A stretch of DNA of 64,000 bases from Octopus bimaculoides (GCF_001194135.2 NC_068988.1:35912002-35976001); one strand, 5' to 3'; positions 3,588-63,168 are shown, counted from the stretch's first letter. Translations and numbers: made by a program. The notes: generated by a model from the letters alone, not told the origin.

Positions 3588-3738
3588 TCTACAAATACCT
3601 TAGGAACGAGAACCTAGGTTCGAAATTTCCCCAAAATACCTGATGAAGGCTGGGGGGTATATCAACCGAAACGTTGTGTTAACAACAAACAAAATGAGGA
3701 CAAATATCCGTCAAATGTAAATAATGTAAATAAAAGCT
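3588..3738 (+). mobile_element. Penelope-like terminal repeat (pLTR-like) fragment containing a hammerhead
   Basis: Hammerhead core followed by AACAACAAACAAAATGAGGACAAATATCCGTCAAATGTAAATAATG. The same tail recurs inverted at 21995-22085. Confidence 0.7.
3635..3680 (+). ncRNA. Minimal type I hammerhead ribozyme motif (HHR-1)
   Basis: AAUAC-CUGAUGA-A-GGCUG-(GGGGGUAUAU)-CAACC-GAAA-CG-UU-GUGUU. Helix I AAUAC/GUGUU; helix II has one C.A mismatch; helix III is the palindrome ACGU; predicted GUU cleavage between 3675 and 3676. Confidence 0.8.
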
Positions 3739-3741
3739 GAC

Positions 3742-4450
3742 CTAATAATGGCTGTTCAGTGGCATTTTCTGACATACCATGCTATGTTGTTTTCTTCTGC
3801 TCTAATGCTATCTTCCCTCCAATAAGCCCTCTTACCCCTCTTTTTCTTGGTACATACAGTCTGTCTGTGTTACTTTTCGGGTGGAGTGTCCCATATCTAG
3901 TGAGCAACTTCCTTGTCTTTCTGTCTAAGCTGTTTAGTTCATCTACTGTCCTTGCGATTACACCTGCTCCATATCTAAGGAGTGAAACTCCTCAGGTGTG
4001 AATAGCTCGAATCGTATTACGTCTGTTTAATTTCGATTTAAGTATCTGTCACAGTCTGCGCAAGTACCCTCCTTAAATTTTTCTGTCATTTCTTTCTCTA
4101 TCAAATTATCTATTTCCAATTTCCCCATGTACCTATAGCCCGTCTCTCCTATCAACTTCATAAACTCCCCGACGGTATTGTTAGCCCGTCCATACATTTG
4201 ATTTTGCCTCTCTTCAAGACTAATACATCACACGTTCTCAGTTCGAACTCCATTCTGATATCAGCATTGAAATTATACACCGTATCAACGAGGTAACTGA
4301 CTTGCGATTCATCTGTACCATAAGGTCTGAGGTCATCGATGAATAATATATGGTTGACTTTTTGGTGGCGGCTTTTGAATACATACCCAGCTCTTGATTT
4401 CTTTAGAATCAGTGTTAGTAGTATCAAGCACAGTTCAAAGATCAGTGGGG
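3742..4450 (-). mobile_element. R4/Dong-like RT fragment, subfamily A
   Basis: ORF 4158-4427 reads LTLILKKSRAGYVFKSRHQKVNHILFIDDLRPYGTDE, matching 2100-2330 on the opposite strand. Confidence 0.9.
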
Positions 4451-4451
4451 A

Positions 4452-4548
4452 TCATTAGGGGACATGCTCAACTGGTTAAGGTTCAAACACTGATAATTAA
4501 ATCTTTGGTATTCAGCAGAATATTTCCTGTAGGCCATCTTTTATACCA
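4452..4548 (+). repeat. Fragment of an unclassified dispersed repeat (same family as 4928-5358)
   Basis: GGGACATGCTCAACTGGTTAAGGT(T/C)CAAAC is shared with 5302-5332. Confidence 0.7.
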
Positions 4549-4550
4549 AT

Positions 4551-4578
4551 ATTATCATCATCATCATCATCATCATCA

Positions 4579-4637
<59 letters not shown>

Positions 4638-4639
4638 GT

Positions 4640-4665
<26 letters not shown>
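4551..4665 (+). repeat. Compound (CAT)n(TAT)n(TGT)n microsatellite
   Basis: Direct reading. Confidence 0.97.
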
Positions 4666-4667
<2 letters not shown>

Positions 4668-4670
<3 letters not shown>

Positions 4671-4905
4671 TTTTCCTTCTCTTCAAATTTTCTTCCATTT
4701 CTCGCAGGGTGTTTTACGTACACCTAGGGCAGCAAAGCTCATGGAATGCATTCCCATTTTACACACGAAAATTCGCAGGTAAAAGATGTATTTAAAAAAT
4801 AAATAAATATATAAATACATGAAGGGATGTTGTTTCCATAGCGATAATGCTCTTCTCAGTACATGAGTCGTTCCAGTTAACACGATTTTTTGCATTTCCT
4901 GTAAG
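4668..4905 (-). mobile_element. 3' end of an R4/Dong-like element, subfamily B
   Basis: LQEMQKIVLTGTTHVLRRALS resembles the C-terminal LQK.ALLGT..ILR..L motif of this clade. Flanked by (AAT)n on its 5' side and the compound trinucleotide tract on its 3' side. Confidence 0.7.
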
Positions 4906-4927
4906 GTATTATTATTATTATTCAGTG

Positions 4928-6182: not shown

Positions 6183-6216
<34 letters not shown>

Positions 6217-10511: not shown

Positions 10512-13500
10512 TGAAAGGAAGCGGTTGGAATCTCCCTATGCTCTGATTGATGATACATCTAGTGATGATGTTACAATAAAAATATTGGTAATTGCGTAAC
10601 CATATGAATTACAATAAAAATCAAAATATTGTAAATAACAGTGGTAATGAAACTGTAGCATTTGATGGTGAGTGTTGCACGCGGCAGGCTCACAGATACT
10701 GGTCCAACGCCAGTTAGTCGTTATCCAGCAAAGGACCAACACACATGGCGTAGATGGAACAAACAAGTTAATGCTGTGGTCATGGAGTATTACTACCTCT
10801 GCAACCCCTTAGACAAAAATGGTGTTCCTTTTAGGGGATACCGACAACGTGTGCATGATCAAAAAGAAAGAAGAGGATTGTTTCAACTCATGGAAACGAG
10901 ATTATGTGATCAAGCTAGAGTATTAAAGAAAAATCGCTGGTCCACAAAATTAGAGCACGAAGCTATCAATAGACGGGTATTGGAACACAGCAGCAGAGAA
11001 AACGATGATTATACAGTTCCTACTGATAAATGTAATCTCGTAGCAGAAAACAGAGGTGAAATATCTAATAAACTACAGGAAAGGAACACATAGATGGTTT
11101 GGAAAAAGACAATAAAACCAAAGGTTTACATGACAGATGGGCAAAAGGCAATCTACGACAGATAAAGGTAAGGCTACAGGAGAGCGATAGTGACATTATT
11201 TCCAACCTTAAAAAAGTAGGTTCATCGGTGGACATCGAACCAAGAAATGAAAAATGTGAATGAAATTCTGAAATATATCAGAACAAGCAACATCTCAGAA
11301 GCAAACAATTTGATCAAGACAGCAAGTATTGTTATAGCAGAAAAAGTGGGTGTTGATGTCAAGTAAAAGAAATATAAAGGGAGTGAAAAAAGAAAAGATC
11401 GATGGTGAATAAGAGTACAGTGGGGTTAGATTTTCTCTCGAAGGACATTGCTGTGTAACACTGAAAAGAGAAAGGGGTGCTTAAAAGCGAAGAAAAATAT
11501 AGGGCACAGAGCAGAAAGTATGATATTGAAGAAAAATGCCTGAAAGTGACTAGCACAGTCAATGTACGGACACCTGAAAAAAATGGAGTCCTGCCACATG
11601 AGCAGAAGGGATGCAGACATAAGTGCAGAGCTACCAAGGAACAACTCTTGGTAGACAAAACTGTACTTAGATACTACAAGAGGTGGAAAACTTGCTTAGT
11701 CAGATCATGGATCGATTATCACAAGACGTATGATATGATCCTACAATCTTGGATCAAAAAATGTATGAACTAATTTGGTATTGCATCGAATACTGAGCAA
11801 TTGTTTGGAAAAATATAGCGAAGAGGAGGATGGAACGGACAACATGTAGAAGAAGGTTAGAGAGAATAGAAATCAGGGGAGGGATCTTCCAAGGGGACTA
11901 CTTGTCCCCTTTAGTCTTTGTACAGTGCCATTTACAACTTACACTAATTCTAAGGAAAGCAAACGCTGAGTATGCATTCAAAAGCTGCCAACAAAATGTC
12001 AGTCACTTTTTAGTCATGAATGACGTCAAAATTTATAGTAAGGATGAATCCCAAGTCCGTTTCCTCGTTGATACGGTGTATACCTTCAGTGCTGGTATCA
12101 GAATGGAGTTCGGACTGAAAAGTGTGGTGTCTTAGTCTTGAACGCAGGCAAAATCAAATGTATGGACAGGCTAGCGATACCGTCGGGGGAGGTTATGAAG
12201 CTGATAGAAGATACGGGCTATAAGTACTTGGGGTTATTAGAAATGAATAAATTGATGGAGCAAGAAATGACAGAAAAATTTAAGATGGAGTACTTGCGTA
12301 GACTGAGACTGATCCTTAAGTCGAATTTAAACGGACGTAATAAGATTGAAGCTATCAACTTGGGCGGTTTCACACCTTAGATATGGAGCAGGTGTAATCG
12401 CATGGACAGTAGATGAACTAAACAGCTTAGACAGAAAGACATGGACATTGCTGACTAGATATGGGACACTCCACCCAAAAAGTGACACAGAGAGACTGTA
12501 TGTACCAAGAAAAAGAATGGAAAAAGGACTGAGTAGATGCGAACACCGCTTTAGAGCAGGAGAAAATAACATATCATGGTATGTAAAAAATGCACAGAAC
12601 CACTATTATTGGAAGTAAGAAGGTCAGGCTTGTGTAGGAAGGAAGATTTCAAAGAGAAAACACCGTACAAGCACTTCAGAACGAATGAAACTCAAAATAG
12701 GTGGGTAAAGAAAAGAATGCATGGACAATTTCATAGAGATGTTGAAGATACGACAGTCAGAGAATAAAGATGGCTATAGATGACTAAATGTGATTTCAAA
12801 CAGGAAACGGAGGCTCTAATCTGTGCTTACCAAAATCAGGCATGAAGAAAGAATTACATCAATTACAGAATATACAACACATCAGAAAGTGGTAAATGCA
12901 GAATTTGTAGACAAAATGTTGAAACCGTATGGCACATTGCCGATCAATGTACGCCACTAGCCCAGAGAGAATATAAGAGACGCCATGACAATATAGGCGG
13001 ATTGTCCATTGGACACTTTGAAAGAAGTATGGACTTGACAGAGCAAAAATTGGTACAACCATAAACCCGAAAGAATCATCGAAAATGATAATTTAAAGAT
13101 TCAATGGGATTTTATAATTCAGTGCTACTATGAGTTAGAGAATAGGAAACCAGACATAGTGTTAATTGAGAAAGAAATCAAACGATGCTGGATCGGAGAT
13201 ATACCATGCCCCGCTGACAACAAGGTATGCGATAAGGAAGAAAGAAAATGTGGTAGTCGTATCTATAATTGTCGGAGCCCTGGTCAGCTTGGGAAATAAC
13301 TGTTAGGGACCTGGAACAGTGAGTAAAAATCTTGAGAATTACATGGAACAAATAGGGGCTACAATAAGGGTGGATCACTTGCAAAAATCAGCACTGCCTG
13401 GTTGCGCTCGAATACTACGGAATGTGTTCGAAAAATAAAGGGTAGTGAACAGCTGGCACCATAGTACATCTCCAGCGTTAGAAGCTGTACAAAGACAATA

Positions 13501-13520
13501 AATGATAATGATAATAATCC
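10512..13520 (+). mobile_element. Near full-length, degenerate R4/Dong-like non-LTR retrotransposon, subfamily A (about 3 kb)
   Basis: N-terminal domain RWNKQVNAVVMEYYY..YRQRV..ETRLCDQARVLKKNRW; RT motifs GCRHKCRATKEQLLVDK, GGIFQGDYLSPLVF and SHFLVMNDVKIY; thumb HPKSDTERLYVPRK; CRIC zinc knuckle; RKPDIVLIEK REL motif. AAT-rich tracts on both sides; many stops and frameshifts. Confidence 0.93.
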
Positions 13521-15050: not shown

Positions 15051-15891
15051 GAGCACTTATTTCATAATGAAATCCACAAATAAGAAGCAAACACCGACGT
15101 TAACGCAAATGAGATTTTAATCAAAGGTTTCCCTGATCAAGGCTAGTCTGGGACAGGCTTGACAACAACAAATTGTCATATATATATATACATGAACAAA
15201 TATATCTTTATGTCATCACAGATCCACATATGCACACGGATCTATATGTTCGCTCTATGAATATATTTACAAAACATCGAAATCAATATTGCGATGGTCA
15301 TTTAAGATATCTTGTATGAATCATGGGAACTTTATGTGCATAAGCATCTGTGAATATACATTTATGCACATCCATATATATTCGTATATATATATTCGTA
15401 TATATAACTAACAAGACATAAAAATATGCATCTAAANNNNNNNNNNNNNNNNNNNNNNNNNNNNNNNNNNNNNNNNNNNNNNNNNNNNNNNNNNNNNNNN
15501 NNNNNNNNNNNNNNNNNNNNNNNNNNNNNNNNNNNNNNNNNNNNNNNNNNNNNNNNNNNNNNNNNNNNNNNNNNNNNNNNNNNNNNNNNNNNNNNNNNNN
15601 NNNNNNNNNNNNNNNNNNNNNNNNNNNNNNNNNNNNNNNNNNNNNNNNNNNNNNNNNNNNNNNNNNNNNNNNNNNNNNNNNNNNNNNNNNNNNNNNNNNN
15701 NNNNNNNNNNNNNNNNNNNNNNNNNNNNNNNNNNNNNNNNNNNNNNNNNNNNNNNNNNNNNNNNNNNNNNNNNNNNNNNNNNNNNNNNNNNNNNNNNNNN
15801 NNNNNNNNNNNNNNNNNNNNNNNNNNNNNNNNNNNNNNNNNNNNNNNNNNNNNNNNNNNNTATATATATATATGCATATATATATATATGC

Positions 15892-15941
<50 letters not shown>

Positions 15942-16588
15942 ATATATACATATACAAGCACACGCGTGTACGAATGCATACAGACACGCATATGTGCATA
16001 TATATGTCTACGTACATACAAATACAAACACATGCGCAAAAACGCATACATTATTATGTTCGTATACACATCTCTAGACGCACAGACACTTACATTCGCG
16101 GATATACAAAACGTAGTCTATACGCTCATGCACATACATACGCGGACGTATATACACATACATATAGACGTATATACAATTAAAAACACATACGCAAAAA
16201 ATATAAACCGTAAAACATTTTCATTCGCCGCAAAATTTGAATATACAAATGAGTTATATATGTAAAGACACAAATACACCCACCTGTCTGTCAAACACGT
16301 CTACACCTGCAGATACATAAACTATATACATATATATATGAATGACAGAAGGTGACAAGTACAACAAGTAGAGTCTTGCGATCGTATATATACAATCATT
16401 CATATACATGTATATATCCACGCACATATACATTAGGCATATTCTACACGCGTATAAGTTACACAATTATAAAGGGTGAAAAATAATGTGCAGATAAAAT
16501 ATATAACGTAATAAAATATATATAAATATGAAAGAGATGTTAAGACATATGAAAGGCTTGTACGTGGATATAATATAAAAATCAGGTT

Positions 16589-17670
16589 CTATCTCTCATC
16601 TTGCGGGGAGGGGTCCAAAAACGTAGCAAATGTTTTGCCATATATGGACATGACAAGTTCAGTTCTTGAATTTAGATATGTAGCGGGGTCTAAAGGACTT
16701 TTCCAGATAAGCCATTTTTTCCATATTGCAAAGAGACTGCACTTTCCACTGCCGTTTGTGTAAGCCTTACACTTGGACAAGATCTTCCAGTCAATCTTAT
16801 AGTTGACACCTTTATCTTTTAAGGACCATATATAACTGGATAATTTGGTTGTTTTCCCTTATCCCAGTGTCTGAAGCTTAAGGTGTGGTTGCTGAACCTG
16901 GCTTTAAAATTTCCCTCTGTGAGACCCACATATTTCTTTGACGAAACTATGTCCTTCGTGGTTTTAGAGCCTACAGTGGCTTCATAAATGATGTGTGCAA
17001 TTATATTTTTAAAGTTAGGAGTAAAACTAAAACTAATTTTTAATTTATGCCTTTTAAAGAGCATTATATGATTATGATTGATTGGAAAATTCCTATCTAT
17101 AAGGGATAAGAAATATCTACATTAAAGGTCACTTCGGGGAGTAAGGTAATTGAACCAGATAATTTTCCTATTCCTATTTTTCCTTTTCTTTGTTACTGGA
17201 CTAATGACATGTGTAAAGGTTATTTCCTCGCTAAAACCACTATCTTTTAAAACTTTATTATCTACTGGGGTAACACTATTAAAAATGATTATACTGGAGG
17301 AGAGGCTAGAAATTTCTTGCTAATATTTTTAACGAAATTCTTAAATGCTATGGGGGGATGGCAGGAACCTACATTAATATAGCTAAGTTTATAAATATTC
17401 TTATTTAAATCTAAAGATACATCTAGGAAATTTACAACTGTCAGATTGGCATCTTTTTTATGCTAAGATCAAATGTTTTCATCATTTGGATAATGTCCTT
17501 CCTAAACTGATCTTGCGCCGGTCCATTGGTGTTTGTGATTAAAGCCAGCGCATCATCTTTGTAAATGGCGAAATATATACCAGGAAAAGTTTTACCCAAC
17601 GTATTGAATAGGAATAGTCCTGAAGGCGCTCTCTTTATCGGTTGTCTTAACCCACTCTGCTCTCTCACTG
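16589..17670 (-). mobile_element. Penelope-like element remnant (RT C-terminus + GIY-YIG endonuclease)
   Basis: RT: GIYFAIYKDDALAL..FRKDIIQ, VVNFLDVSLDL, YINVGSCHPP. GIY-YIG: KKYVGLTEGNFKARFSNHTLSFRH, KCKAY..GSGKCSL, YLNSRTELV. Frameshifted. Confidence 0.9.
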
Positions 17671-21994: not shown

Positions 21995-22085
21995 TACATT
22001 ATGTACGTTATTTACATTTGGCTGATATTTGTCCTCATCTTCTTTGTTGTTAACACAACGTTTCGGTTCTAATTCCTAGGGTAAT
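21995..22085 (-). mobile_element. Internally deleted copy of the 3588-3738 pLTR-like repeat
   Basis: Reverse complement CCTAGGAATTAGAACC|GAAACGTTGTGTTAACAACAAAGAAGATGAGGACAAATATC lacks the CUGAUGA core. Confidence 0.75.
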
Positions 22086-22089
22086 TTTT

Positions 22090-22108
22090 GATGTTGTTGT
22101 TGTTGTTG

Positions 22109-22185
<77 letters not shown>

Positions 22186-26146: not shown

Positions 26147-26457
26147 ATCGCCAGTCTCGTAATATAACACTTGGTGATTTTGGTTCAAATCGGAAGTGTG
26201 AAACTATTTTCACTTTCTAATGAAACCTGGTCATCGCTGAGCAGTGTCTTTCAAATAACTAAAGCTGGTTATTGAGATAACGTAGAACATATCTAAATGG
26301 AAATAAAGTCTACTTGGTAGCCGAAAGTTTACTGAATCTGTTCATACCCCATATGTCAAAATCGGCAACTCAGTTTTCGAATGCATAAGCAAAATACTAT
26401 ACACCCCCGACGCACCACCCCTCACACACGCACAAACACAAAAACACACACACACAA

Positions 26458-26488
<31 letters not shown>

Positions 26489-26574
26489 ATCCCTGNNNNN
26501 NNNNNTACATACATACTTATACACACGCACATATATATATGTGTGTGTGCGTGTGTGTGTTGAATAAAATGAGA

Positions 26575-27145
26575 GAACAAAGCCAAGGCTGTGTGGAATT
26601 TATAGGACATTTATGAAGAGATACATAGTCTTACAGCTGTTTCTGGGATATTAGGGATATCCCTTCGCCAGAGACGATATGAGAGAGTTAACTTTTTTTC
26701 TTCTTTCTCGCTCATAGAGTTGGTATCGTGCAGGTGTGTTTACTGATTATGTGAGTAGACGACTGTCTTAAGCTGCTTTGCAGCTGTTTTCTGGTTGTGC
26801 TTTCTCTCCGCCTTGAGTAGGGTCTACAATGTCAACAGTAAAACACATGTTCTATTCGGAGTTTAGTGGGTTCGAAGTGTCCTCTTAGGAGGAGGAGCTC
26901 GTACGAGTAGTTGATAGAATGGACAAGTGCTCAAGGAAGAAAAGTTTTGCGGAATTGACAGGAGTCACAAAAAAGGAGCTGGACCTGACAAACATGGAGA
27001 AATACGAGAAAATGGCATGTAAGGTAGGTGGTGACGCTAAGTTGTCACCACCACAGAAAGTATTGGCGCGGTAACGATTCTTTGTGCCAGCTTGCCATCT
27101 TAATTTTGCTATCGCATTATAACGAGTTTTTCTTTTAATCAACAT
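26575..27145 (-). mobile_element. Probable Penelope-like 3' end carrying a hammerhead
   Basis: Hammerhead motif at 26628-26675 with a GC-richer upstream segment. The protein homology of that segment is unresolved. Confidence 0.45.
26628..26675 (-). ncRNA. Type I hammerhead ribozyme motif (HHR-2), A6 changed to G
   Basis: GUCU-CUGGCGA-A-GGGAUA-(UCCCUAA)-UAUCCC-A-GAAA-CAGCUG-UA-AGAC. Helix I 4 bp, helix II 6 bp, palindromic helix III ACAGCUGU, GUA site. Confidence 0.8.
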
Positions 27146-27629: not shown

Positions 27630-27830
27630 TACATACAAACATGTATGTATGTATGTATTATATGTATGCATGCATGTATGTATGTATGCATTCATACACA
27701 CATACATACATGCATGCATACATACGTACATACATACATACACGTGTGCACGCACGCACGCATACTTCCATACATCCCTACATATACATAGACAGGCATG
27801 CAGACAGGCAGACAGACACACAATTAGAGC

Positions 27831-32138: not shown

Positions 32139-33628
32139 TTGGGTTGGCAACTAAGTTCTCACCGTTTCATTAAATTTTGGAATTTATTGCCTTCTTAAAG
32201 TTTGGAATTTCATGCATTTTTAAATTTTGGAATCTATTGTTTTCGAGAATTCTATTTTTGAATCATCTTGGAATCTGTTTTTTTTTTCTAGTTAATTTAA
32301 TTAATTTTTGTTTATTTTTAGATCATTAAAATGGAATGTCAAGTTAAGAAAAACGATCGTTTCCGACACCTCCTTCTTTCTGCTTTTAATCAAGGTTCTA
32401 AGGCCACAAAAGCTGTTCGCGACATTTGTGCTGTGTATGGAGAGGGTGCCATGGCTGAAAGAACNNNNNNNNNNNNNNNNNNNNNNNNNNNNNNNNNNNN
32501 NNNNNNNNNNNNNNNNNNNNNNNNNNNNNNNNNNNNNNNNNNNNNNNCCGACACCTCCTTCTTTCTGCTTTTAATCAAGGTTCTAAGACCACAAAAGCTG
32601 TTCGCGACATTTGTGCTGTGTATGGAGAGGGTGCCATGGCTGAAAGAACCGCTCGTAATTGGCATGCCAAGTTCAAAAATGGAAATTTTGACCTCAAGGA
32701 CACACCTCGTTCTGGCCGTCCAGTTGAGTTCGATGAAGAGCGATTAAACCAAATTTTGCACGAACATTCTCGTCAAACAAGGTAACTGGCAGCGAAAATG
32801 GAATGCTCCGACACTGCTAGAGAGAAGCATCTTCACACGACGGGAAAGTTTCAGAAGTATGGAGCGTGGGTTCCGCACACTTTAAGTGACAACAGCAAAA
32901 ATCAACGAGCCACAATCACCACTGGTTTGCTTGCTGGTTACCGATCAACTTATGGACACAAGCAACGATTTCTTTACCGAATCGATACTGGCGACGAGAA
33001 ATGGTGCCTGTACATCAATATGAAGCAGCGTAAGGAATGGCATAGCCCCGGTAAACAAATAACACCGCGCGTGAAACAAGATCTTCATCCGCGTAAAACG
33101 ATGTTGTGCGTATGGTGGGACTGGTAAGGGATTATCCATTACGAATTACTTGAACGGAACCAAACTGTCAACTCAGAACTCTATGTTCAACAGATGGAAC
33201 GACTCAACACGGCTATTCAAGAGAAAAACCTAATCGTCAGCATAAAGTTCTTCTGCTGCACGACAACGCCCGCCCTCATATCGCCAATATGACCAAGAAA
33301 GCCATTCAAAGGCATGGCTGGGAAGTGCTACCATACCCGCCGTGCTCTCCTGATTTGGCGCCAACGAATTTCCACCTCTTTTGATCTCTTTCAAATGCTA
33401 AGCGCGGAGTTTCGTTCAATTCTGATGCAGAATTGAGAGCTTGGTTGGATCAATTTTTCGAGTCGAAATCGGGTAATTTCTACCAACGAGGTATTGAATA
33501 TCTTGTTGAACGCTGAGAAGTTTTAAACAACAAGGGTGAATACATTATTGATTAATCAGTTGTTATTTTTTATCAAAACTTAAAAATTTAAATTTAAAAA
33601 AACAGCAGGAACTTAGTTGCCAACCCAA
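32139..33628 (+). mobile_element. Near-complete mariner (Tc1/mariner, DD34D family) DNA transposon
   Basis: 20-bp perfect TIR TTGGGTTGGCAACTAAGTTC (32139-32158) / GAACTTAGTTGCCAACCCAA (33609-33628), with TA on both sides (32137-32138 and 33629-33630). Confidence 0.97.
32331..33555 (+). pseudogene. Inactivated mariner transposase
   Basis: [58 protein letters not shown]. Stops and frameshifts are present, and the third catalytic Asp reads Asn. Confidence 0.95.
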
Positions 33629-42309: not shown

Positions 42310-44720
42310 GAGACAACAGAGGGCAGCGGTTTTCGACGTGTGGTCGTAAAAAGGATGATGAAAGGGAAATGATGACACCTTGTTCTCTGGACCGGACGGT
42401 TCTTAGGATCCATGAGTTCATCCTACAAGCTGTATCCACTTTACAGCTGATGTGGGCACTCCAGCTGAGATTGTTGTCAGCAATTACTCCTAGTTATCTG
42501 ATATTATTAGATGCTATGAGTGGTTCCCCTGAATGAAGTGAGTATGGTTGTTTTAGCAGCCTTTCTTCCAAAATGCATCAGCTAAATTTTTCCCTCATTT
42601 AGCTGCATTTTGTTTTTGTCTGCTCGTGTTTTTGTCACAGCATGTCTATCAGATTGGACTTCAGTTCGGGCTTTTTTTCCATTGATAATTGTTTGGAGTC
42701 ATCAGCGAATATTTTCACTTTGGAGTGTTTTATGACCCCATGAAATGTCGTTTATATAGACTAGAAATAGATGCGAGCCCAAGACAGTACCCTGGGGGAC
42801 ACCACTGGTGATTTTTGCTGAGCTTGAGTGGATTCCACCAATCACAACATGTGTTCTGTTCTTCCGGAAATACTCAATCCAGTGTAGTAGTTTTACGCGA
42901 ATTCCAACATTTGACAATTTTGACAGTAGGATATTGTGGTCGACTCTACCGGAAGCTTTACTAGGGTCATGATATATGATATCAGAATTCGAACCTGATC
43001 CTAAGGCTTTAAGGACAATCGATGTGGTGTAAGAACTGTATTAGGCTGTCCCTGCAGCTGCAAAAGCCATGCTGGTTTGAATGTAGGAGATTGTGGTTCT
43101 CCAAGAAGCCAGCTATGCTTGATCTCACCACTCTTTCTAACACTTTAATGATATTGGAGTTGACTGCGAGCGACCTGTTTCCCTGTTTGAAAACCGGAAT
43201 TACAGACTGGGATAAGAACTTTTTCGGTATATAACCTGAATCTAAAGAATTTCTCCAGAGGTCGGTTAGAGTAACTGCAGGTAGGTGTCTTCTGTCCTTC
43301 AGTAGACTAGTAGGTAATCTATCAGGGCCTACAGCAGAACAATATTTCATCTCATTTAATACTGCTATGATGTCTGAAGCAGTAAAGATTATGTTCGAGA
43401 TGATATGATGGGAATCGACTTCGTTCATATCTCTTACGTCAATATCAGTGGGATCACTAAAGGCAGAGCAGTATTGTTTCTGCTGTACTTCTGCTATGCC
43501 TTTAGCATCATGCTGGAGAATGCCGTTATCATCGATCAGTGTAATAATGGGTGAGACAGCGGTCGAATGATTATTTGCATATAAATAGAACGCATTTGGG
43601 TTCAGTTTGAAATTTTTTACTACTCACTATTCCTCTGCAGCTCTTTGATTTTCAATGCGGATTTTCATGTTAGTCTGTAGATGAAATTTTTCCAACTCCA
43701 GCCTTTTAATTGTTGCTGAATATGGATGCTGTATGTGGGAGAATTATAACTGGTTGATTTTAAAAATTAAATCATTTTATGCTCCCGATGAGTGTTATTT
43801 TGCTCTGTAAGAAGCCTGTTTCTGTTTGTGCTAGTGAATTTCGTAGGAGCGTATTTTGCGCATCTATAGGTGACACTGTCCTCAAAGTACTGCCATGTGG
43901 CTTCAATATCAGTGGAACTGAGAGTCAAGGACCAGTTGATAAAGGACAGATACTTTCTGAATGCTCCCCAGTCAGCTTTCTGGAAGTTTTTGTTGCCAAA
44001 TATGTGCAGTGGAGTGGAAATGACTAGTTTGGCTTAGAAATGCCGGAAATCAAAGTTGCAGAGGTCCTGGAGGAGAGTCTTTTCAACTGAAATGCTGTGA
44101 ATAGAGCTAGGGTAGTTTGTTAATATCCGATCGAAGATAGTTTTATTCTCTCTCGTTGGTTCGAGCACTAGCTGTGTCAAGAAAAAATTCATCCGTAGAT
44201 TAAAGGGTAATTCTGCTGTTGCTTTGTCTGGTGTAGTGTCGTCGCCTAACTTTTGAGTATTTGTCGGCCAGTTTACACAAGGGAGGTTAAAATCACCCAT
44301 CACCAGTATGTTTCCAGAGTTATATTTTTGCAGGAAGGACTTGATTTTGCTGAAGCTTTATTCAAAGCACTTTAGAGGTGCTTTGATGGGTGTGTAGAAA
44401 CCAACAATGGTTATATCGTTGGCTTTGTTGAATAATGATATGGATCCACAGTAGCCATTACACTGGAAAATATGTCCTTTGCATCAACTGTAAATAAATC
44501 ATGGAGGAAAATGGCTGTTTTTCCTTTATTTCGGTCTGTGCAATATGCACAGATGATGGTGAAATCTTTTATTTTCACCTCGGCATCCATATGAGTGCTG
44601 TTTATCTGAATTTCAGTAAGGATAAAGAAAGAGACGCAGTGTGCCGTTGCGGCAAACCAACGCTCTCTATATGAGATCTTCCATTTTCAGGGAATGAGTG
44701 ATGGGTTGTTGTCATGTGCA
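42310..44720 (-). mobile_element. CR1-clade LINE ORF2 remnant (APE endonuclease + RT)
   Basis: APE: FILTEIQ, MMGDFNLP, LTQLVLEPTR..FDRILTN. RT: AVGPD, VIPVFKQG, IKVLERVV, SNQHGF, SGVPQGTVLGSHLFLVYINDI, LGVIADNNLSWSAHI. Confidence 0.92.
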
Positions 44721-45769
44721 TTTAGCAGAAATGTCGAGGCAAGTGTAGTTTGATGTTTGGATTGTTCTAAGTGCTTAGGCTTATGTGATATGTTGTTTAA
44801 TGGAAGCAGTGAAAGTAGATGTTGTATGGAGCTGTATGTATAGAGTAATGTTGTAGTTGATGGTGGGTGTATATATATATTGACATGTATGACATTCTGA
44901 ATACCATATTTATGTAAGCGTGTGGAGAATAATCTTATACACTTGAAAAATATATTTGCAGTATAATCCAACAAACAAGCAATGCTATTTATTTCTCGCA
45001 GCGTTTGGCTTCCGTTCTGCCTCGCTTTTACTGCCAAATCTTACGTTGCTAAATAATTGAAGCGGAGTTTCCAGTATTCCAGCATATGAAAGATTTAGTG
45101 CTTAAAATTAATGAAAGATGACATTTATAAGATTTTGTTTGCGAGAGGAGAAATGTTATTCATAAACAAAAAATAGAGAAACGGACGGCAAGTATGTGAT
45201 TTCATGGCTGATATGTTGTATCGAATGAAACCAGTTCCAGACACGATAGAAGAAGAGTACTTGAGTAGGTTGTTGATGGAAATATTTGTAAAATTTGATT
45301 GCTTTCGTATAAAACTATTCATATGGTCAAAAAGAGAGCTTTTAATATCATCATTTATCAAATATCCTGGCTAATGTCAAGTAGTATCATTATCCTAATA
45401 CAATTCTCGAGAAATATGGATAACGTGTGTATGCATTAATGGTTCAGTGTCCGATTCGATAATATATTATATACGAAGTAAATATCAGAGTGTAGTGTAC
45501 AAAGCCATTCCGTGTATATAATAATTGGAAGCATTTATCTGAATTCAGTATTTAGAAAGTGTATATGTCTGTCAGTCTGTCTATCTATCTATCTATTTCT
45601 ATTTATTTATCTATTTTTCTACCAATCTGCCTGTCTGATTGTCTGTGTATCTGTCTACGTACACACTGACACACACACATATACATATATATGCGTATGT
45701 TTGTATATATACACATATATATATACAGGTAAATGTATGTATATGTATATACACACACAAGTACATATA

Positions 45770-45800
<31 letters not shown>

Positions 45801-46399
45801 GTGTATGCGCGCGTGCGTGTGTAAGTGTATGTATATGCATGTTTGTACATACAAATTTTACTATTCGACGTATGAAAAAAATGTACATTTGTAACGTATG
45901 AACCTCTCAAGAGCTGTAACAATGAAATTTTTTAATCTCATAGTTCAGAGATGAAAACGATCTAAAGAACAACGTTTGCAAAATCTGACCTTAACCTAGG
46001 AGTAGATGATGCGCCGAAAACATTTCTATTGCGTTCAGTATGAATTGCTTATCTTCAACTAGCAACCGACTGGATACCAACGCTGGTTCCGAAGCATGAA
46101 GATACCAAAATCTTGCCCTCAGTCACTAAAAAACTGAACAAAAAAACAACCTTCCGTAAATGCAGTTAGACGAACCAGTACCCCAATAAAATGCATTCCC
46201 TTTTGACAAAGCAATCACGTAAAAAAAAATAAGCCTCCAATAGACTAAGGAGAAATTGGAGCATGGTAATCACCCAAGTAGTGATAGTGACCCTAATATA
46301 GAACAAACCCTTGAATATCAGCGGCTCATATGCTCTAATCACAAACGAGAGACTGAGGAGTATGACTCTGCCTTCCAACTGGGAATGCCAACACTAATG

Positions 46400-46860: not shown

Positions 46861-47050
46861 ATTAGGCTTTCTACAATGTTTCTGCTATGTGACGTAGAGG
46901 CTCCTATTTCAAACTAGTACTGATTCAGTCTCACATATTTAATTTTTATTCAGTACGCCTGCTAATTGCGATATTAGTGATTCTTCATTCACTCTCTTAC
47001 TATTTTTTAGCATCTAATTTTATCTTAGCAAGTGATTATCAGAGAACGGT

Positions 47051-47095
47051 TGCTACTGACGAAGCCCAACAGGCGGAAATGTTCATTTAACAGTA
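47051..47095 (+). ncRNA. Degenerate hammerhead-like motif (HHR-3), cut off by an N-gap
   Basis: CUGACGA-A-GCC-(CAACA)-GGC-GGAAA-UGUU-(CAUUU)-AACA-GUA, then the gap. GGAAA is two substitutions from GAAAC. The helix I 3' strand is not visible. Confidence 0.45.
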
Positions 47096-47467
47096 NNNNN
47101 NNNNNNNNNNNNNNNNNNNNNNNNNNNNNNNNNNNNNNNNNNNNNNNNNNNNNNNNNNNNNNNNNNNNNNNNNNNNNNNNNNNNNNNNNNNNNNNNNNNN
47201 NNNNNNNNNNNNNNNNNNNNNNNNNNNNNNNNNNNNNNNNNNNNNNNNNNNNNNNNNNNNNNNNNNNNNNNNNNNNNNNNNNNNNNNNNNNNNNNNNNNN
47301 NNNNNNNNNNNNNNNNNNNNNNNNNNNNNNNNNNNNNNNNNNNNNNNATATATATATATATATAAAGAAAAATAGTTAAGAAGTTAACAATGCATGGAGA
47401 ATAGTTAAAATATTCTTTATTAATATATTTAAAGCTTTAAGCGGTTTCACAACACAATTGACACTGA

Positions 47468-53899: not shown

Positions 53900-54330
53900 A
53901 AATGCTAAACAACAGTTTGCAAATGATTGGTAAGAATGTAAACAAGGCGGAGAACTTTCTAGGTGCAATCCCAAGTTCCTTCATGACAGAAAGGAGTTTT
54001 TACTGCAGCTGTGTGTAACACAACCACCATGATCACCAATAAAACAAGAAAAGTAGTTTGTCATCTAAAATGTATGGAGCGGAGAATGTAAGAAACCGAC
54101 CAAACCATTGATAGTGGAAGCTATATGAACAACAGCTGAGATAATGGATGCGTACTGGAAGGATTATAGTGATAGCAGACATTCATCGGTTCTGTATCAG
54201 CATTCTAAGAATAAACATAGTGGCATACTGGATAACAGTGACAAAAAAATTATATCAATACAACCATATGACGCAGTATATGCGAATCTACGCGAATAAA
54301 CGAATGGCAATCATGACTTGATGACAGTTA
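53900..54330 (+). mobile_element. Possible, very degenerate Penelope-like GIY-YIG fragment
   Basis: KTRKVVCHLKCME..ET and SVLYQHSKNKHSG..KIISIQPYDA..RE resemble VVY.I.C..C...Y.GET and H...H.G..DA..RQ.RE. Confidence 0.4.
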
Positions 54331-57154: not shown

Positions 57155-57189
<35 letters not shown>

Positions 57190-57366
57190 TGGACGCATAT
57201 ATATGTGCGCATACATATATATAGATAGAGATATAGTTATAGCTATATTTCATATATATTTGCGCGTGTGTGTGTATAAATATACATGTAGGTATATATC
57301 GTGTATATTAAATATATAATTTAATATACACAATTTACTGAAGAAATAATAAATTGTGTGTATTAG

Positions 57367-57421
<55 letters not shown>

Positions 57422-59210: not shown

Positions 59211-59246
<36 letters not shown>

Positions 59247-59252
<6 letters not shown>

Positions 59253-59810
59253 AAAATTTTGGGTTCAGCAAGCATTGCTTCACCACACACCGAAAATTAG
59301 AAATAGCAGCCAAAACTACTATTTCTCTACCAAAATACGACTCCCGAAACAGCAATTCTCGCAGCTGACAAAGGCAAAAAAAGAAAAAAATAACGAATCT
59401 ACCCGGCCTTGATTAATTGCAGGCACGTTTCTGGATCAAAGAGGTGTAAATCATATGACCCAAACATATTTCTTTCATCAGTGCAATATTTCAAAATTAT
59501 AAATCCGAGAATGCTAATAAAAGAATAATTAATTCGATCAGGTGACATCAAATGATTACCCAAGAACAGCATTTCCGTATTCATATAGACGAGCGATAAA
59601 ATCATCTCATTCCTCAATTACCCACGTGCGCTACGAGTAATCCCGCAGACAACTGCAGTTCTCTGCGTGATTAACTTTGCTTTTGTTAGCTGCGAGTATT
59701 GCTGTTTCGGGAATCGTATTTTGGTAGAGAAATGTTAGTTTTGGCTGCTGTTTCTAATTATTGGTGTGTGGTGAAGCAATGCTTGCGGTACCCTAAATTT
59801 TAATTTTGTC
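59247..59810. mobile_element. Non-coding 560-bp element with about 132-bp inverted terminal arms and an internal hammerhead-like motif
   Basis: 59247-59378 versus the reverse complement of 59676-59807: 13 mismatches in about 132 nt by manual alignment. Abuts (TA)n on the left and TATATA on the right. Confidence 0.85.
59416..59487 (-). ncRNA. Degenerate type I hammerhead-like motif (HHR-4)
   Basis: AUUGCA-CUGAUGA-(AAGAAAUAUGUUU)-GGGUCA-(17 nt)-UGAUCC-A-GAAAC-GU-GCC-UGCAAU. Helix I is a perfect 6 bp and helix II has 6 bp; the triplet reads GCC rather than GUC. Confidence 0.6.
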
Positions 59811-59898
59811 TATATAAATTTACCGATAATGGTTTATTAACACACCGAACTACTTGGTAAAATTACTAATTATTAATTAATTATTAATTTTTACCCTA

Positions 59899-59931
<33 letters not shown>

Positions 59932-60409
59932 GACTTCCGGTTTCGGTTGTGGAAGACGTGTTTTTTTGTGCTCCTGAAATAACCTAGAGGGATTCCCGAA
60001 ATTAACGAAATATCTACCACAACTGACCAAAATAACATAGTACTTGTTATTTCCTAACTGTCTACTATAATATATTCGTGAAAAAGTATAATGTATTACA
60101 TTAATGTTTGATATATTACATTGAAGTCAACGACGCAAGCCAGAGATATCCTGGAAGAAAGCATGTTGTGATAAATCGTAGTTTCATAAGTGGCCGTGTG
60201 TGAAGAAGAAATCGATTTTTCTTCGAAACGAAACTTCGTAGAAAAACAACGATTGGAATTTTTACCTTTTGGGAATAAGTATCTTATTCATTTTGCTTAT
60301 ATTATTTTGTTTTATCTCTGGTATTCCCGGATGAAAATTTAAGTGAGAACGCATTGTTTGTTTACGTTTTATTTGAAACATTTACGGTAGTAAATTCGTT
60401 ACGAAACAT

Positions 60410-61200
60410 CTTTCTTCCCACCATCGTTATTCATGTCATTTCTTAAAGCGGCCTTTTCTTTCCATACTCTCTTTTTTCCTCTTTCCTTTATATCTTCGTT
60501 ACCTGCCCTTCCCCTCTCTCTTTCGTAACTTCCTCTTTTTGTCTCCTCTCCCCCTCTCTCTGTCTCTCCTCCCCTTTCATATCTACCTCCTTTTCCCGCT
60601 TCTCTCTCCTTCATTCTCCCTGTCTCTACATCAACTTCTCTCCCTCTCTCTTTCATACATTCCTCTTTTCTTTCCTCTCTCCCTCACTGTCTCTCCCTCC
60701 TTTCCATATCTTCCTCCTTTTCCCGCTCGTCTCTCCCGCCTGTTGTANNNNNNNNNNTTCTCTCCCTCTCTCTTTCATACATTCCTCTTTTCTTTCCTCT
60801 CTCCCTCACTGTCTCTCCCTCCTTTCCATATCTTCCTCCTTTTCCCGCTCGTCTCTCCCGCCTGTTGTATCTCTCTACATCTACCTCTTACCTCTCATCT
60901 CCCCTCTCCCTTCTCCCTCATATATTTCTTGTTTTTCCTCCTCTCCCTCCCACTCAATCTCTCCCTTTCCTTCATACGTTCTTCATTCTCTCCTCTCTCT
61001 TCCTCACTCTGTTTCTCTTTCTCTTCTCCTTCCATCTGTCTCACTATCGCTCCATGCCCTTTTCTCTTTTCTTCAAATCATTCTCTCTCCTTTCTCCATC
61101 TCTCTCTCTCTCTCTCTCTCTTCCCCTTTTTCACCCTCTGTCTTTCATCCTCTCTACCTGCCTCTATCTCTCTCACTTCTCTATCTTATCCAATCTCTCT
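60410..61200 (+). repeat. CT-rich low-complexity tract
   Basis: Polypyrimidine sequence; the L/S/P/F-rich ORFs are spurious. Confidence 0.9.
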
Positions 61201-62490
61201 AGGCATAGATAACGAAGATGGCACTACAGTCTGAAGTCAATGAAATGAATCTTCTGTTGCGACCTTGGACAATTTGCTATCGGCGATCTTCCAAACAACA
61301 TCATTACTGCTGCACTGAAGAACAATGGTTTCTGTAGAACCATTGAGCAGATAGAGTGGGAAAAAACGAATTTCTCTGATCCTATGCCTTTGTTAGGCCA
61401 CATATTGACACTCTTGATGTCATCATGGAAAACAACTGTGGCAAGGCTTATAAGAATAGGGAAAATGAAGCAACAACCAGAAGTCTCTCTCATTCAGGGG
61501 TACCACAAAAGATTGGAGCCCTCACCCCTGTGGACAACCAGAGGAATGTTAGGGCTACAACCAGTGGAAGAAAGGAATGACCACAAGCAACACATAAAAA
61601 AAGAAAAAGGAGAGGAAGGAAAAGGAAACGATGAAACAACTAAAGCTAAAACTGAAACCCCAAACCACAAACAAAAAACAAAATGCCCAAACCTGAAGGC
61701 TCCAATTCGCAAATCTAGAGGAGAGAAAAATTTAGAGTGAAGACAAGGATGTGCCAATGTTGGCATCGGGAAGACGGTACAAACTGCCGGTTTGCTCATC
61801 CAAGACCCCACCAAAACTGTAGGGGCTTTAAGTAGTAGTACTTCCTAGAAGAATGGTACCATTCGTCTGCAAGAAGAAAGTATGCAGATGCTGTGCGCTC
61901 TTCAGATGTTATACAAAAGGCGGTAGCTGAGCAACTGTCTTTTTTGTGCATGGCACAAAAGATTGTGCAGCAGCTGACCTGCCTACATCAAGCGCAAACA
62001 CAGAACTTTGCCCACCACTGTGCAAGATCACCACCATCAACAGACATGGGATGGCCTCTCTTAACACTATCAGTCATCAAGCCAATATTTTCACTTAATA
62101 TTGGAGATTTGTTGCATCACAACAACAAAAACAAAATCATTTCCTGTGAGGCCTTGCTGCGTGCAATCAAGCCCTATGCATAGCACTCATGGAAACTCAT
62201 CTGAGGCCTGATATAGAAGATGCAGAAGTAGACGTACCAAAATATACCATACTGCTTACAGATAGAAGAGAAAGGAGCCATGGTGGAGTTGCTGTATACA
62301 TCCGTGAGGACCTCACACCCCAGCTCCTACTGTCATATTGAAATTCAGTATGTGACACTCTAGTTGTATATATAAGACAACACAATATACTTATATGGAA
62401 TACATAACGCTCACCGGATGCTCCAAACCATGCAGGCAAGTTTGAAAATTGCCTTACAAGAATAAAAGAAACCCTCATGAAACTGGAACA
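61200..62490 (+). mobile_element. 5' part of a CR1-clade LINE (ORF1 remnant + APE endonuclease)
   Basis: NCRFAHP CCCH-like finger remnant; APE IALMETHLRPDIEDAEVDVPKYTILLTDRRERSHGGVAVYIRED..RSPD. Confidence 0.85.
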
Positions 62491-62512
62491 TCACGTGAGT
62501 GTGTTTCTTATG

Positions 62513-62561
<49 letters not shown>

Positions 62562-63125
62562 GGGGGGGTATGTATGTGTATATATGTTTGTGTGTGCGTG
62601 TTTGTGTGTGTATTATTAGGGTGGAATGTCACAGTTTAAAGACAAAAGACACAAACATACATATACATGGACTAAAATATTCTTAAGGAAACACGAAATT
62701 ACAATAATTTCAATGTGATGATTAGCAAAAGATAAACCGGTCGACAATCAAATACTCTTTCACTCATGAAGTATATTAAAGAATATATTAAATCTATGTA
62801 AACTATGTGCATTTTTCCTTTTTTTTATTTTATGTACATATCATTTGCATTACAACTCACCTTGTGGGAATAATGGCAATTCTCCTTCTCCCGTTTTCTT
62901 ACTATATATGTGTGTGTGTTTGTGTGTATGTGTTTGTGTGTGCGTGTGCGTGTGCGTGTGTATGTGTGTGTATGTGCGCGCGCGCGTGTGAGTGTGTGTG
63001 TGTGTGTGTGTGTGCGTATTAATATCTGTTCTGATGTTCGGTTGTAACAAAAATATTAACCTCATGTGTCACTCTGTCCTTTTGTAGAGTACAGATATAT
63101 CATTCAGATACAAGAATATTATTGC

Positions 63126-63168
63126 CAGTGACTTCGAAGTTTCGACCACTCAAACCATTGTCAGGCTG
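63126..63168 (-). ncRNA. Degenerate type I hammerhead-like motif (HHR-5)
   Basis: CAGC-CUGACAA-U-GGUU-(UGAGU)-GGUC-GAAA-CUUCGAAG-UC-ACUG. Helix III is the 10-nt palindrome ACUUCGAAGU with a GUC site; G8 is changed to A; helix II is mostly wobble pairs. Confidence 0.55.

What the first reader, a model, noticed from the sequence alone, without database searches (positions are those of the whole stretch)
3635..63168. Five unrelated hammerhead-ribozyme motifs in 64 kb sharing the same variant architecture
Seen: motifs at 3635(+), 26628(-), 47051(+), 59416(-) and 63126(-). Their flanks are unrelated, yet all show type I order (helix I, CUGANGA, helix II, GAAA, helix III, NUH) and extra nucleotide(s) after A9. 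Three have loop-less self-complementary helix III (ACGU, ACAGCUGU, ACUUCGAAGU). Established: Penelope-like element terminal repeats and retrozymes carry minimal type I hammerheads that cleave as dimers through palindromic helix III. Inference: this genome hosts several hammerhead-bearing Penelope/retrozyme-like families at high density. Some may be non-autonomous RNAs mobilised by Penelope RT/GIY-YIG, of which remnants lie at 16589-17670 and possibly 53900-54330.
Basis: partly seen in the sequence, partly recalled or inferred. Interest (0 to 1): 0.82.

Follow-up and report, generated by a model that had tools for sequence, protein, structure and literature searches.

The report
Decayed Penelope-type hammerhead ribozyme relics
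Four of the five flagged sites look like real but mostly worn-out copies of the small "hammerhead" self-cutting RNA motif that Penelope-like jumping genes carry near their ends, a kind of sequence already known to litter animal genomes; the fifth looks like a chance match.

Summary
Four of the five motifs are more than chance. They fit the published minimal type I hammerhead of Penelope-like elements (PLEs).

- **Shared features (3635-3680 +, 26628-26675 -, 47050-47093 +, 63125-63169 -):** one unpaired base after A9, a G10.1-C11.1 pair closing helix II, a palindromic loop-less helix III, and a short helix I.
- **Statistics:** a defect-tolerant descriptor finds three of them. It expects 0.033 hits per window; none of 2000 dinucleotide shuffles reached the observed counts. 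The fourth site was scored by a separate partial test.
- **Cores:** only 3640(+) and 47056(+) keep CUGANGA. 26671(-) reads CUGGCGA and 63164(-) reads CUGACAA, so these two are probably dead.
- **Fifth motif (59416 -):** no helix II next to the core and G at position 17. It looks like chance.
- **Context:** flanks are mutually unrelated and there are no tandem arrays. Two sites lie 72 and 115 nt upstream of (CA)n microsatellites, which fits PLE 3' ends.
- **PLE remnants:** 16600-17620(-) is a degenerate Hydra-clade PLE (tblastn 9e-30). The proposed remnant at 53900-54330 could not be verified.

This is a known phenomenon, so interest is low to moderate. Family consensus, covariation and cleavage could not be tested.

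The parts
3635..3680 (+). Site 1: minimal type I hammerhead with intact core. Sequence: AAUAC / CUGAUGA / a / GGCUG-gggggUAUAU-CAACC (helix II 5 pairs with one C.A mismatch) / GAA / ACGU / U17 / GUGUU.
   Evidence: Sequence. Descriptor hit with 1 defect; 0 of 2000 shuffles reach this level. Lies in a repeat with a second copy at 21999-22128(-).
26628..26675 (-). Site 2: hammerhead relic. Sequence: GUCU / CUGGCGA (A6->G) / a / GGGAUAU-cccua-AUAUCCC (7-bp helix II) / a / GAA / ACAGCUGU / A17 / AGAC.
   Evidence: Sequence. Descriptor hit with 2 defects; shuffle mean 0.0045. Cleavage site lies 72 nt upstream of a (CA)n tract on the same strand.
47050..47093 (+). Site 3: hammerhead with intact core. 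Sequence: UUGCUA / CUGACGA / a / GCC-caaca-GGC / g / GAA / AUGUUCAU (6 of 8 self-complementary) / U17 / UAACAG. It ends 2 nt before N gap 47096-47347.
   Evidence: Sequence. Core + helix II + GAAA is expected 0.02 times per window. A (TA)n tract follows the gap.
63125..63169 (-). Site 5: hammerhead relic. Sequence: ACAGC / CUGACAA (G8->A, a CpG->CpA change) / u / GGUU-ugagu-GGUC (4 pairs, 3 of them G.U) / GAA / ACUUCGAAGU / C17 / ACUGG (helix I 3 of 5 pairs).
   Evidence: Sequence. Descriptor hit with 3 defects; shuffle mean 0.033. Cleavage site lies 115 nt upstream of a (CA)n tract on the same strand.
59416..59490 (-). Site 4: CUGAUGA ... 43 nt ... GAAACGU G. Judged a chance match and not part of the feature.
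   Evidence: No pair closes helix II next to A9/G12, position 17 is G, and helix I is out of register. It passes no descriptor. It lies between the arms of a 147-nt inverted repeat.
21999..22128 (-). Second copy of the site-1 element. It has the same 30-nt 5' segment and the same 70-nt 3' part (91% identical), but lacks the 52 nt that carry helix I 5' strand, CUGAUGA and helix II. The missing piece is bounded by AACC direct repeats.
16600..17620 (-). Degenerate, 5'-truncated Hydra-clade Penelope-like element. It runs from RT motifs (Y-K-DD) through SxHPP and IIWFN to a GIY-YIG-like endonuclease (YVGLTEGNFKARFSNH). It has several stops and frameshifts, and its 3' flank is TA-rich microsatellite.
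   Evidence: Translations. Homologues at E = 6e-24. The family has 17072 representatives, and the full-length ones (~700 aa) carry this module at the C-terminus. tblastn gives 9.4e-30. Sub-threshold Pfam GIY-YIG hit in homologue P0110. Clade motifs follow PMC8557442.
53990..54330 (+). Not verified.
   Evidence: By eye it resembles a canonical PLE endonuclease. It has no homologue and no Pfam match even at E <= 10.
26423..26559 (.). (CA)n/(TA)n microsatellite, with the 10-nt N gap 26496-26505 inside it, downstream of site 2. Likely insertion target.
62909..63014 (.). (CA)n microsatellite downstream of site 5. Likely insertion target.

Best explanation
Sites 3635-3680(+), 26628-26675(-), 47050-47093(+) and 63125-63169(-) are solo copies of the minimal type I hammerhead that Penelope-like retroelements carry in their pseudo-LTR, near the 3' end of each inserted unit.

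- Origin (inferred): each copy was left by an independent insertion of a different PLE family, or of a short PLE-derived element. Most were 5'-truncated, and most landed in or beside a microsatellite.
- Function in an active element (from the literature): the RNA motif cannot close helix III alone. Two copies pair through the palindromic helix III (ACGU, ACAGCUGU, AUGUUCAU, ACUUCGAAGU) to form a dimeric ribozyme. It cuts after position 17 and would process multimeric PLE transcripts.
- State here (inferred): the copies are isolated and decaying. Two keep an intact core. Two carry one transition in an essential core base (A6->G; G8->A at a CpG) and are probably inactive.
- The motif at 59416(-) is a chance match.

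Shown: the sequence architecture, its excess over chance, the microsatellite context and the presence of a PLE remnant. Inferred: PLE origin of each copy, dimer mechanism, inactivity.
For: 1. Architecture matches the features published as diagnostic for PLE min-HHRs (PMC4209133): a base between A9 and 10.1, a G10.1-C11.1 pair, palindromic 15.2-16.2/loop 3, short helix I, and helix II up to 7 bp. All four sites have the first two.
2. Excess over chance: 0 of 2000 shuffles reach the observed counts. The true core is the best of 540 cores at <=1 and <=2 defects on the real sequence. The reversed sequence gives 0 hits.
3. Position: the literature places PLE hammerheads near the 3' end of the unit (PMC8557442). 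Reverse transcription starts about 85-92 nt downstream of the cut site (PMC11167929). PLEs prefer microsatellite targets.
   - Sites 2 and 5 lie 72 and 115 nt upstream of (CA)n. The background rate of such proximity is 8.9%.
   - Site 3 is followed by a gap and then (TA)n.
   - Site 1 sits between (AAT)n and AT-rich sequence.
   - The layout recurs on the comparison contig L001: clear type I hammerheads lie about 90 and 55 nt upstream of (TA)n and (TATC)n, beside a Hydra-clade endonuclease gene.
4. The genome hosts PLEs: remnant at 16600-17620(-).
5. The site-1 element is repeated in the window.
6. The defects are transitions, as expected for neutral decay. Site 5's is CpG->CpA.
Against: - No Rfam hammerhead model matches any site, even at E <= 10 on 120-nt stretches. 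The same search also misses the clear hammerheads of L001, so this counts for little.
- No PLE coding remnant was found within 2.5 kb upstream of sites 2 and 3, or within 0.8 kb of site 5. That test is insensitive, and I had no canonical-clade PLE queries.
- Helix II is weak at three sites: 3 bp at site 3, three G.U pairs at site 5, and a mismatch at site 1.
- Sites 2 and 3 have an extra base between 11.1 and G12. The sources I read do not describe this.
- Only one family has a second copy in the window, and that copy lacks the 5' half. No family consensus or covariation is available.
- MFE folding of monomers and dimers does not reproduce the hammerhead fold, except for the intermolecular helix III of site 5.
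- The descriptor was designed after I had seen the sites.
Confidence: 0.75

Rival explanations
1. All five motifs are chance matches in AT-rich, repeat-rich DNA. CUGANGA and GAAA are short, and loose helices are easy to find.
For: CUGANGA occurs 26 times against 24.2 expected. A first, simple descriptor found 0-1 site, in line with shuffles. Rfam finds nothing. Two cores deviate from consensus, and site 4 is clearly loose.
Against: With the PLE-specific features required, three sites are found against 0.033 expected, and 0 of 2000 shuffles reach this. 539 decoy cores on the real sequence do not reproduce it. Site 3 is expected 0.02 times. Microsatellites lie at the expected distance for two sites.
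Confidence: 0.06
2. Some of the motifs, above all the ~165-nt site-1 element, belong to short non-autonomous hammerhead-bearing retroposons. These would be retrozyme- or SINE-like elements, transcribed on their own and mobilised in trans by PLE RT/GIY-YIG.
For: No PLE ORF adjoins any site. The site-1 element has two copies in 64 kb, and both are short, 113-165 nt. A 2026 preprint argues that animal retrozymes are non-autonomous PLE derivatives (10.64898/2026.07.22.740005).
Against: There are no tandem repeats of 150-400 nt anywhere in the window, and tandem arrays define animal non-LTR retrozymes. No tRNA-like part was found. The second site-1 copy lacks the ribozyme's 5' half. Short copies are equally expected from 5' truncation. 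Two cores are mutated.
Confidence: 0.15
3. The motifs derive from the Hydra-clade PLE whose remnant lies at 16600-17620(-).
For: It is the only verified PLE in the window. Hydra-clade elements carry hammerheads and target microsatellites.
Against: Hydra-clade hammerheads are described as canonical. The two on L001 have no extra base after A9 and a 6-nt loop 3. No hammerhead follows the remnant's endonuclease. No Hydra-clade coding remnant lies near any motif. Hydra elements prefer (TA)n, whereas sites 2 and 5 sit at (CA)n.
Confidence: 0.04

Closest known systems
Minimal hammerhead ribozymes (min-HHR) of metazoan Penelope-like elements (Cervera & de la Pena 2014, PMC4209133; dimer cleavage also reported by Lunse, Weinberg & Breaker 2016, a paper I could not read here)
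   Same: Type I topology. One unpaired base between A9 and 10.1. G10.1-C11.1 pair. Palindromic, loop-less or nearly loop-less helix III that implies dimers. Short helix I (4-5 bp). Long helix II at site 2 (7 bp). Many unrelated families per genome, mostly as solo copies away from full PLEs.
   Different: Two of the four have a core substitution (A6G, G8A). Two have an additional base between 11.1 and G12. Helix II is only 3-5 bp at three sites. Location in a pseudo-LTR could not be shown.
Animal non-LTR retrozymes (Cervera & de la Pena 2020, PMC7229834; Li et al. 2026 preprint)
   Same: Type I hammerheads with short palindromic helix III. Proposed dependence on PLE machinery.
   Different: Retrozymes are tandem repeats of a few hundred nt, each with a hammerhead, that give circular RNAs. 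No tandem repeat of that size exists in the window.
Hydra-clade Penelope-like elements (Craig et al. 2021, PMC8557442)
   Same: The remnant at 16600-17620(-) is homologous to proteins with an RT followed by a CxCX5C linker and a GIY-YIG-like endonuclease with CxxC...E...N...CxH. Its 3' flank is TA-rich microsatellite.
   Different: The window copy is 5'-truncated, frameshifted and lacks the linker segment. No hammerhead is left beside it. It is probably unrelated to the four motifs.
Schistosoma Sm-alpha / SINE-like hammerhead elements
   Same: Short dispersed repeats that carry a type I hammerhead.
   Different: No pol III/tRNA-like part was found at site 1. Sm-alpha hammerheads are canonical and match Rfam models, and these do not.

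Membership tests
PLE minimal type I hammerhead (min-HHR) | Type I order: helix I 5' strand, CUGANGA, helix II hairpin, GAAA, helix III, NUH, helix I 3' strand | tested here: met
   Four sites (3635+, 26628-, 47050+, 63125-) have this order with all helices in register. Site 59416- does not.
PLE minimal type I hammerhead (min-HHR) | Intact catalytic core (C3 U4 G5 A6 N7 G8 A9, G12 A13 A14, H17) | tested here: inconclusive
   Met at 3640+ and 47056+. Not met at 26671- (G at position 6) or 63164- (A at position 8). A single transition each fits decayed copies, but no family consensus is available.
PLE minimal type I hammerhead (min-HHR) | Unpaired nucleotide between A9 and 10.1 | tested here: met
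   a, a, a, u at the four sites.
PLE minimal type I hammerhead (min-HHR) | G10.1-C11.1 pair closing helix II | tested here: met
   Present at all four. Sites 2 and 3 then have one extra base before G12, which is not part of the published description.
PLE minimal type I hammerhead (min-HHR) | Palindromic 15.2-16.2 / loop 3 (dimer-forming helix III) | tested here: met
   ACGU, ACAGCUGU and ACUUCGAAGU are perfect palindromes. AUGUUCAU is 6 of 8.
PLE minimal type I hammerhead (min-HHR) | Sequence families with covariation in helices I and II | not testable with these tools
   No access to the rest of this genome. The only extra copy in the window lacks helices I and II. The metagenome scan gave one unrelated hit.
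PLE minimal type I hammerhead (min-HHR) | Location in the pseudo-LTR / near the 3' end of a PLE unit | tested here: inconclusive
   The distance to a downstream microsatellite (72 and 115 nt) fits published PLE 3' ends. No PLE ORF was found upstream, but that test is insensitive.
PLE minimal type I hammerhead (min-HHR) | Self-cleavage, as dimers | not testable with these tools
   Needs an experiment. Cofolding gives the intermolecular helix III only for site 5.
Rfam hammerhead families (Hammerhead_1, _3, _II, HH9, HH10) | Score at or near the covariance model's threshold | tested here: not met
   No hammerhead match at gathering score or at E <= 10. The control contig L001, with clear PLE hammerheads, is also missed. 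The models do not cover this class.
Animal non-LTR retrozymes | Tandem repeats of roughly 150-400 nt, each with a hammerhead | tested here: not met
   TRF finds no period above 29 nt in the window. Self-BLAST finds no nearby second copy.
Hydra-clade PLE (remnant 16600-17620 -) | RT followed by a C-terminal GIY-YIG-like endonuclease | tested here: met
   Order on the minus strand is Y-K-DD, SxHPP, IIWFN, YVGLTE..FK.R..H. tblastn to ~700-aa family members covers positions 216-747 at E = 9.4e-30.
Hydra-clade PLE (remnant 16600-17620 -) | CxCX5C linker and CxxC / CxH around the conserved E and N; no CCHH | tested here: inconclusive
   Present in the homologues (CNCRxKDxC, CNLC...E...N...CRH), as described in PMC8557442. 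In the window copy the linker segment is deleted and the cysteines are mutated.
Hydra-clade PLE (remnant 16600-17620 -) | Insertion into (TA)n and a hammerhead near the 3' end | tested here: inconclusive
   The 3' flank is TA-rich microsatellite, but no hammerhead is left there.

The most novel reading that the evidence does not exclude
Two unrelated families (sites 26628- and 47050+) share an unpaired base on both sides of helix II: a...a and a...g, that is, a 1x1 internal loop between the core and G10.1-C11.1. If the family consensuses keep this and the RNAs cleave, it would be an undescribed structural variant of the PLE hammerhead.

Separately, the ~165-nt site-1 element could be a very short non-autonomous hammerhead retroposon mobilised by PLEs.
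Probability: 0.12. Interest if true: 0.5.

Novelty: new member of a known kind. Interest (0 to 1): 0.27.

Why it matters
It matters little for new biology. Minimal hammerheads of Penelope-like elements have been known since 2014 to occur by the thousands in animal genomes, mostly as solo, variable copies.

The finding is useful in three ways:
- **Annotation:** four short stretches and one coding remnant of this window can be labelled as PLE-derived.
- **Density:** there is about one motif per 15 kb of resolved sequence. This suggests, from one selected window only, that the genome may be rich in such elements.
- **Method:** Rfam's hammerhead models miss this class entirely, even clear examples. 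Genome scans that rely on Rfam will therefore under-report them.

Tried and rejected
- **Rfam scans.** I ran gathering and E-value scans of the whole window and of three sites. There was no hammerhead hit. I first read this as evidence of chance. I dropped that reading when the control contig L001, with clear hammerheads, was missed too.
- **First simple descriptor.** It required a contiguous helix II of >=3 bp and an exact core. It found 0-1 site, at chance level. It was too rigid for decayed copies and was replaced by a PLE-specific, defect-tolerant descriptor.
- **CUGANGA-N8-45-GAAAC excess.** Observed 5 against 1.1 expected. The three extra places (46353+, 48390-, 18225-) have no helix II or helix I and were rejected by eye.
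- **MFE and cofold predictions.** Uninformative.
- **Looking for more family copies.** Self-BLAST found only one extra copy, for site 1. A metagenome scan with a 22-mer gave one unrelated hit.
- **Identifying the organism.** An exact-protein look-up and a homologue search with a window ORF both found nothing.
- **Verifying 53900-54330 as GIY-YIG.** Nothing found.
- **Pfam on translated upstream regions.** Nothing found, but the test also misses what looks by eye like a LINE RT, so it is weak.
- **tRNA-like search.** Nothing found.

Full report
**What the window is.**
It is a 64-kb stretch with 35% G+C, 18 runs of N and 42 microsatellite tracts, so it is a draft eukaryotic scaffold. I could not identify the organism. 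None of the five motifs is interrupted by a gap. The one at 47051 ends 2 nt before gap 47096-47347.

**First pass: it looked like chance.**
- Rfam found no hammerhead at gathering score. At E <= 10 none was among the 150 matches listed (19 weaker ones were not shown). This held for the whole window and for 120-nt stretches around three sites.
- Exact CUGANGA occurs 26 times on both strands, against 24.2 in dinucleotide shuffles.
26671(-) reads CUGGCGA and 63164(-) reads CUGACAA.
- A simple descriptor (exact core, contiguous helix II of >=3 bp, helix I of >=4 bp) found nothing.

**What changed my mind.**
Cervera & de la Pena 2014 (PMC4209133) list four features of minimal hammerheads in Penelope-like elements (PLEs) that their own search did not impose:
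- a base between A9 and 10.1;
- a conserved G10.1-C11.1 pair;
- palindromic 15.2-16.2 and loop 3;
- families with covariation.

They also describe a long helix II and a short helix I, mostly solo copies, and extreme sequence variety within a genome.

I wrote a descriptor from these features, with the following parts:
- helix I with at least 3 of the first 5 pairs;
- CUGANGA;
- 0-1 base;
- a G-C-closed helix II of >=4 pairs with a 3-9 nt loop;
- 0-1 base;
- GAAA;
- a perfectly self-complementary A...U helix III of 4-12 nt;
- position 17 not G.

Departures are counted as defects. It finds 3640(+) with 1 defect, 26671(-) with 2 and 63164(-) with 3.

**Controls for the descriptor.**

| Control | Result |
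|---|---|
| 2000 dinucleotide shuffles, <=1 defect | mean 0 against 1 observed; none reaches it |
| 2000 dinucleotide shuffles, <=2 defects | mean 0.0045 against 2 observed; none reaches it |
| 2000 dinucleotide shuffles, <=3 defects | mean 0.033 against 3 observed; none reaches it |
| Reversed sequence | 0 hits |
| 539 permuted decoy cores on the real sequence, <=2 defects | mean 0.007 hits, never more than 1, against 2 observed |

- The few decoy hits are mostly near-variants of the true core at the same sites.
- Site 47056(+) escapes this descriptor because its helix II is 3 bp and its helix III is 6 of 8 palindromic.
- Its exact core, G-C-closed helix II and GAAA are expected only 0.02 times per window.
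- A complete reading of that site fits before the gap: UUGCUA/CUGACGA/a/GCC-caaca-GGC/g/GAA/AUGUUCAU/U/UAACAG.
- The descriptor was written after I had seen the sites, which inflates the significance. The margin is large even so.

**The fifth motif.**
59416(-) fails every version. No pair can close helix II next to A9 or G12. The base after GAAACGU is G. The 6-bp helix I is displaced by 2 nt. I treat it as chance. The mild excess of CUGANGA-N8-45-GAAAC (5 against 1.1) comes from sites 1 and 4 plus three places without any helices.

**Why the Rfam result does not count against this.**
- Contig L001 was fetched through a homologue of the window's PLE endonuclease.
- It carries clear type I hammerheads at 4523(+), 6548(+) and 5903(-), with exact cores, helix II of 4 and 9 bp, and matching helix I.
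- Rfam reports none of them at E <= 1.

**Context.**
- The flanks of the sites share nothing beyond the core, so these are different families.
- There is no tandem repeat with a period above 29 nt and no tRNA-like sequence.
- Sites 2 and 5 lie 72 and 115 nt upstream of (CA)n tracts on their own strand. Only 8.9% of positions have a microsatellite at 40-150 nt downstream.
- Site 3 is followed by a gap and then (TA)n.
- Site 1 follows an (AAT)n tract that ends a repeat which looks by eye like a LINE 3' end. Pfam did not confirm this.

This fits three published points:
- PLE hammerheads lie near the 3' end of the unit, and PLEs prefer microsatellite targets (PMC8557442).
- In the Anolis Poseidon element, reverse transcription starts about 85-92 nt downstream of the hammerhead cut site (PMC11167929).
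- On L001 the two hammerheads lie about 90 and 55 nt upstream of (TA)n and (TATC)n.

**The site-1 element.**
- It has a second copy at 21999-22128(-), with the same 30-nt 5' segment (80-88% identical) and the same 70-nt 3' part (91%).
- That copy lacks the 52 nt with helix I 5' strand, CUGAUGA and helix II.
- The missing piece is bounded by AACC repeats.
- I cannot decide between a slippage deletion and two insertions with different truncation points.
- Either way the second copy gives no support to conservation of the ribozyme.

**PLE coding remnants.**
- The minus strand of 16600-17620 encodes, with stops and frameshifts, RT motifs (IYKDDALAL), SCHPP, IIWFN and YVGLTEGNFKARFSNH.
- It has homologues at E = 6e-24.
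- A profile search finds 17072 cluster representatives. The ~700-aa members carry this module at the C-terminus, and tblastn back to the window gives 9.4e-30.
- The homologues have CNCRxKDxC, CNLC...E...N...CRH. This is the linker and endonuclease signature given for the Hydra clade.
- The window copy has lost the linker segment, and no hammerhead follows it.
- Hydra-clade hammerheads are described as canonical, and those on L001 lack the extra base. The four motifs therefore probably come from other PLE clades.
It has no homologue and no Pfam match.
- No coding remnant was found upstream of the motifs, but that test is weak.

**State of the copies.**
- Sites 1 and 3 keep all core bases.
- Site 2 has G at position 6.
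- Site 5 has A at position 8, which is a CpG-to-CpA change from CUGACGA.
- From established hammerhead biochemistry, both positions are essential, so these two are probably dead. This is an inference.
- Sites 2 and 3 also have a base between 11.1 and G12. The sources I read do not describe this. It may be a mutation or a real variant.
- All copies are solo, so a dimer could form only in trans.

**Verdict.**
- four relics of PLE-type minimal hammerheads from unrelated families;
- one chance match;
- one verified PLE remnant.

This is a known phenomenon. Family consensus, covariation and cleavage remain untested.

Noticed in passing
L001 4516-4562(+), 6541-6600(+), 5903(-) (comparison contig, ENA ERZ25073780): Clear type I hammerheads sit beside a Hydra-clade endonuclease gene, each 55-90 nt upstream of a microsatellite. 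Two of them form an inverted pair. Rfam 15 reports none of them at E <= 1, so its hammerhead models miss PLE-type motifs.
   Followed up: partly
window 59232-59378 and 59676-59822: A 147-nt inverted repeat (88% identical) brackets about 300 nt that include the rejected motif at 59416-59490. (TA)n tracts lie at both outer ends. It could be a foldback or MITE-like element.
   Followed up: no
window ~1100-3590 (+): Frameshifted translation shows non-LTR retrotransposon features by eye (FMDDLRLYG; HGQFHRD...CRICG). It ends in (AAT)n just before site 1. Pfam did not confirm it. Its 3' part (3347-3585) is repeated at 13295-13514.
   Followed up: partly
window 32331-32464 (+): An ORF start matches the HTH_48 domain of Mos1/mariner transposases (E = 5e-11). 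It runs into gap 32465-32547.
   Followed up: no
window 43009-43428 (-): A 139-aa ORF looks like the N-terminal part of a non-LTR reverse transcriptase (GPDRLP...VIPVFKQG...HGF). There is no Pfam hit above threshold.
   Followed up: no
window 3744-4040, 12317-12610, 2474-2627: Another dispersed repeat (85-88% identical) has three copies in the window. One begins about 65 nt downstream of site 1.
   Followed up: no
window 26900-27100 (+): The strand opposite site 2's upstream region has an open frame (ELVRVVDRMDKCSRKKSFAELTGVTKKELDLTNMEKYEKMACK). It may be a fragment of a transposon DNA-binding protein. Not tested.
   Followed up: no
window, many places (e.g. 27633-27751, 15864-16072, 45645-45858): Dozens of sub-threshold Rfam 'microRNA' matches (mir-297, mir-466, mir-3149, MIR2593) are (TG/TA)n microsatellites, not genes.
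   Followed up: yes
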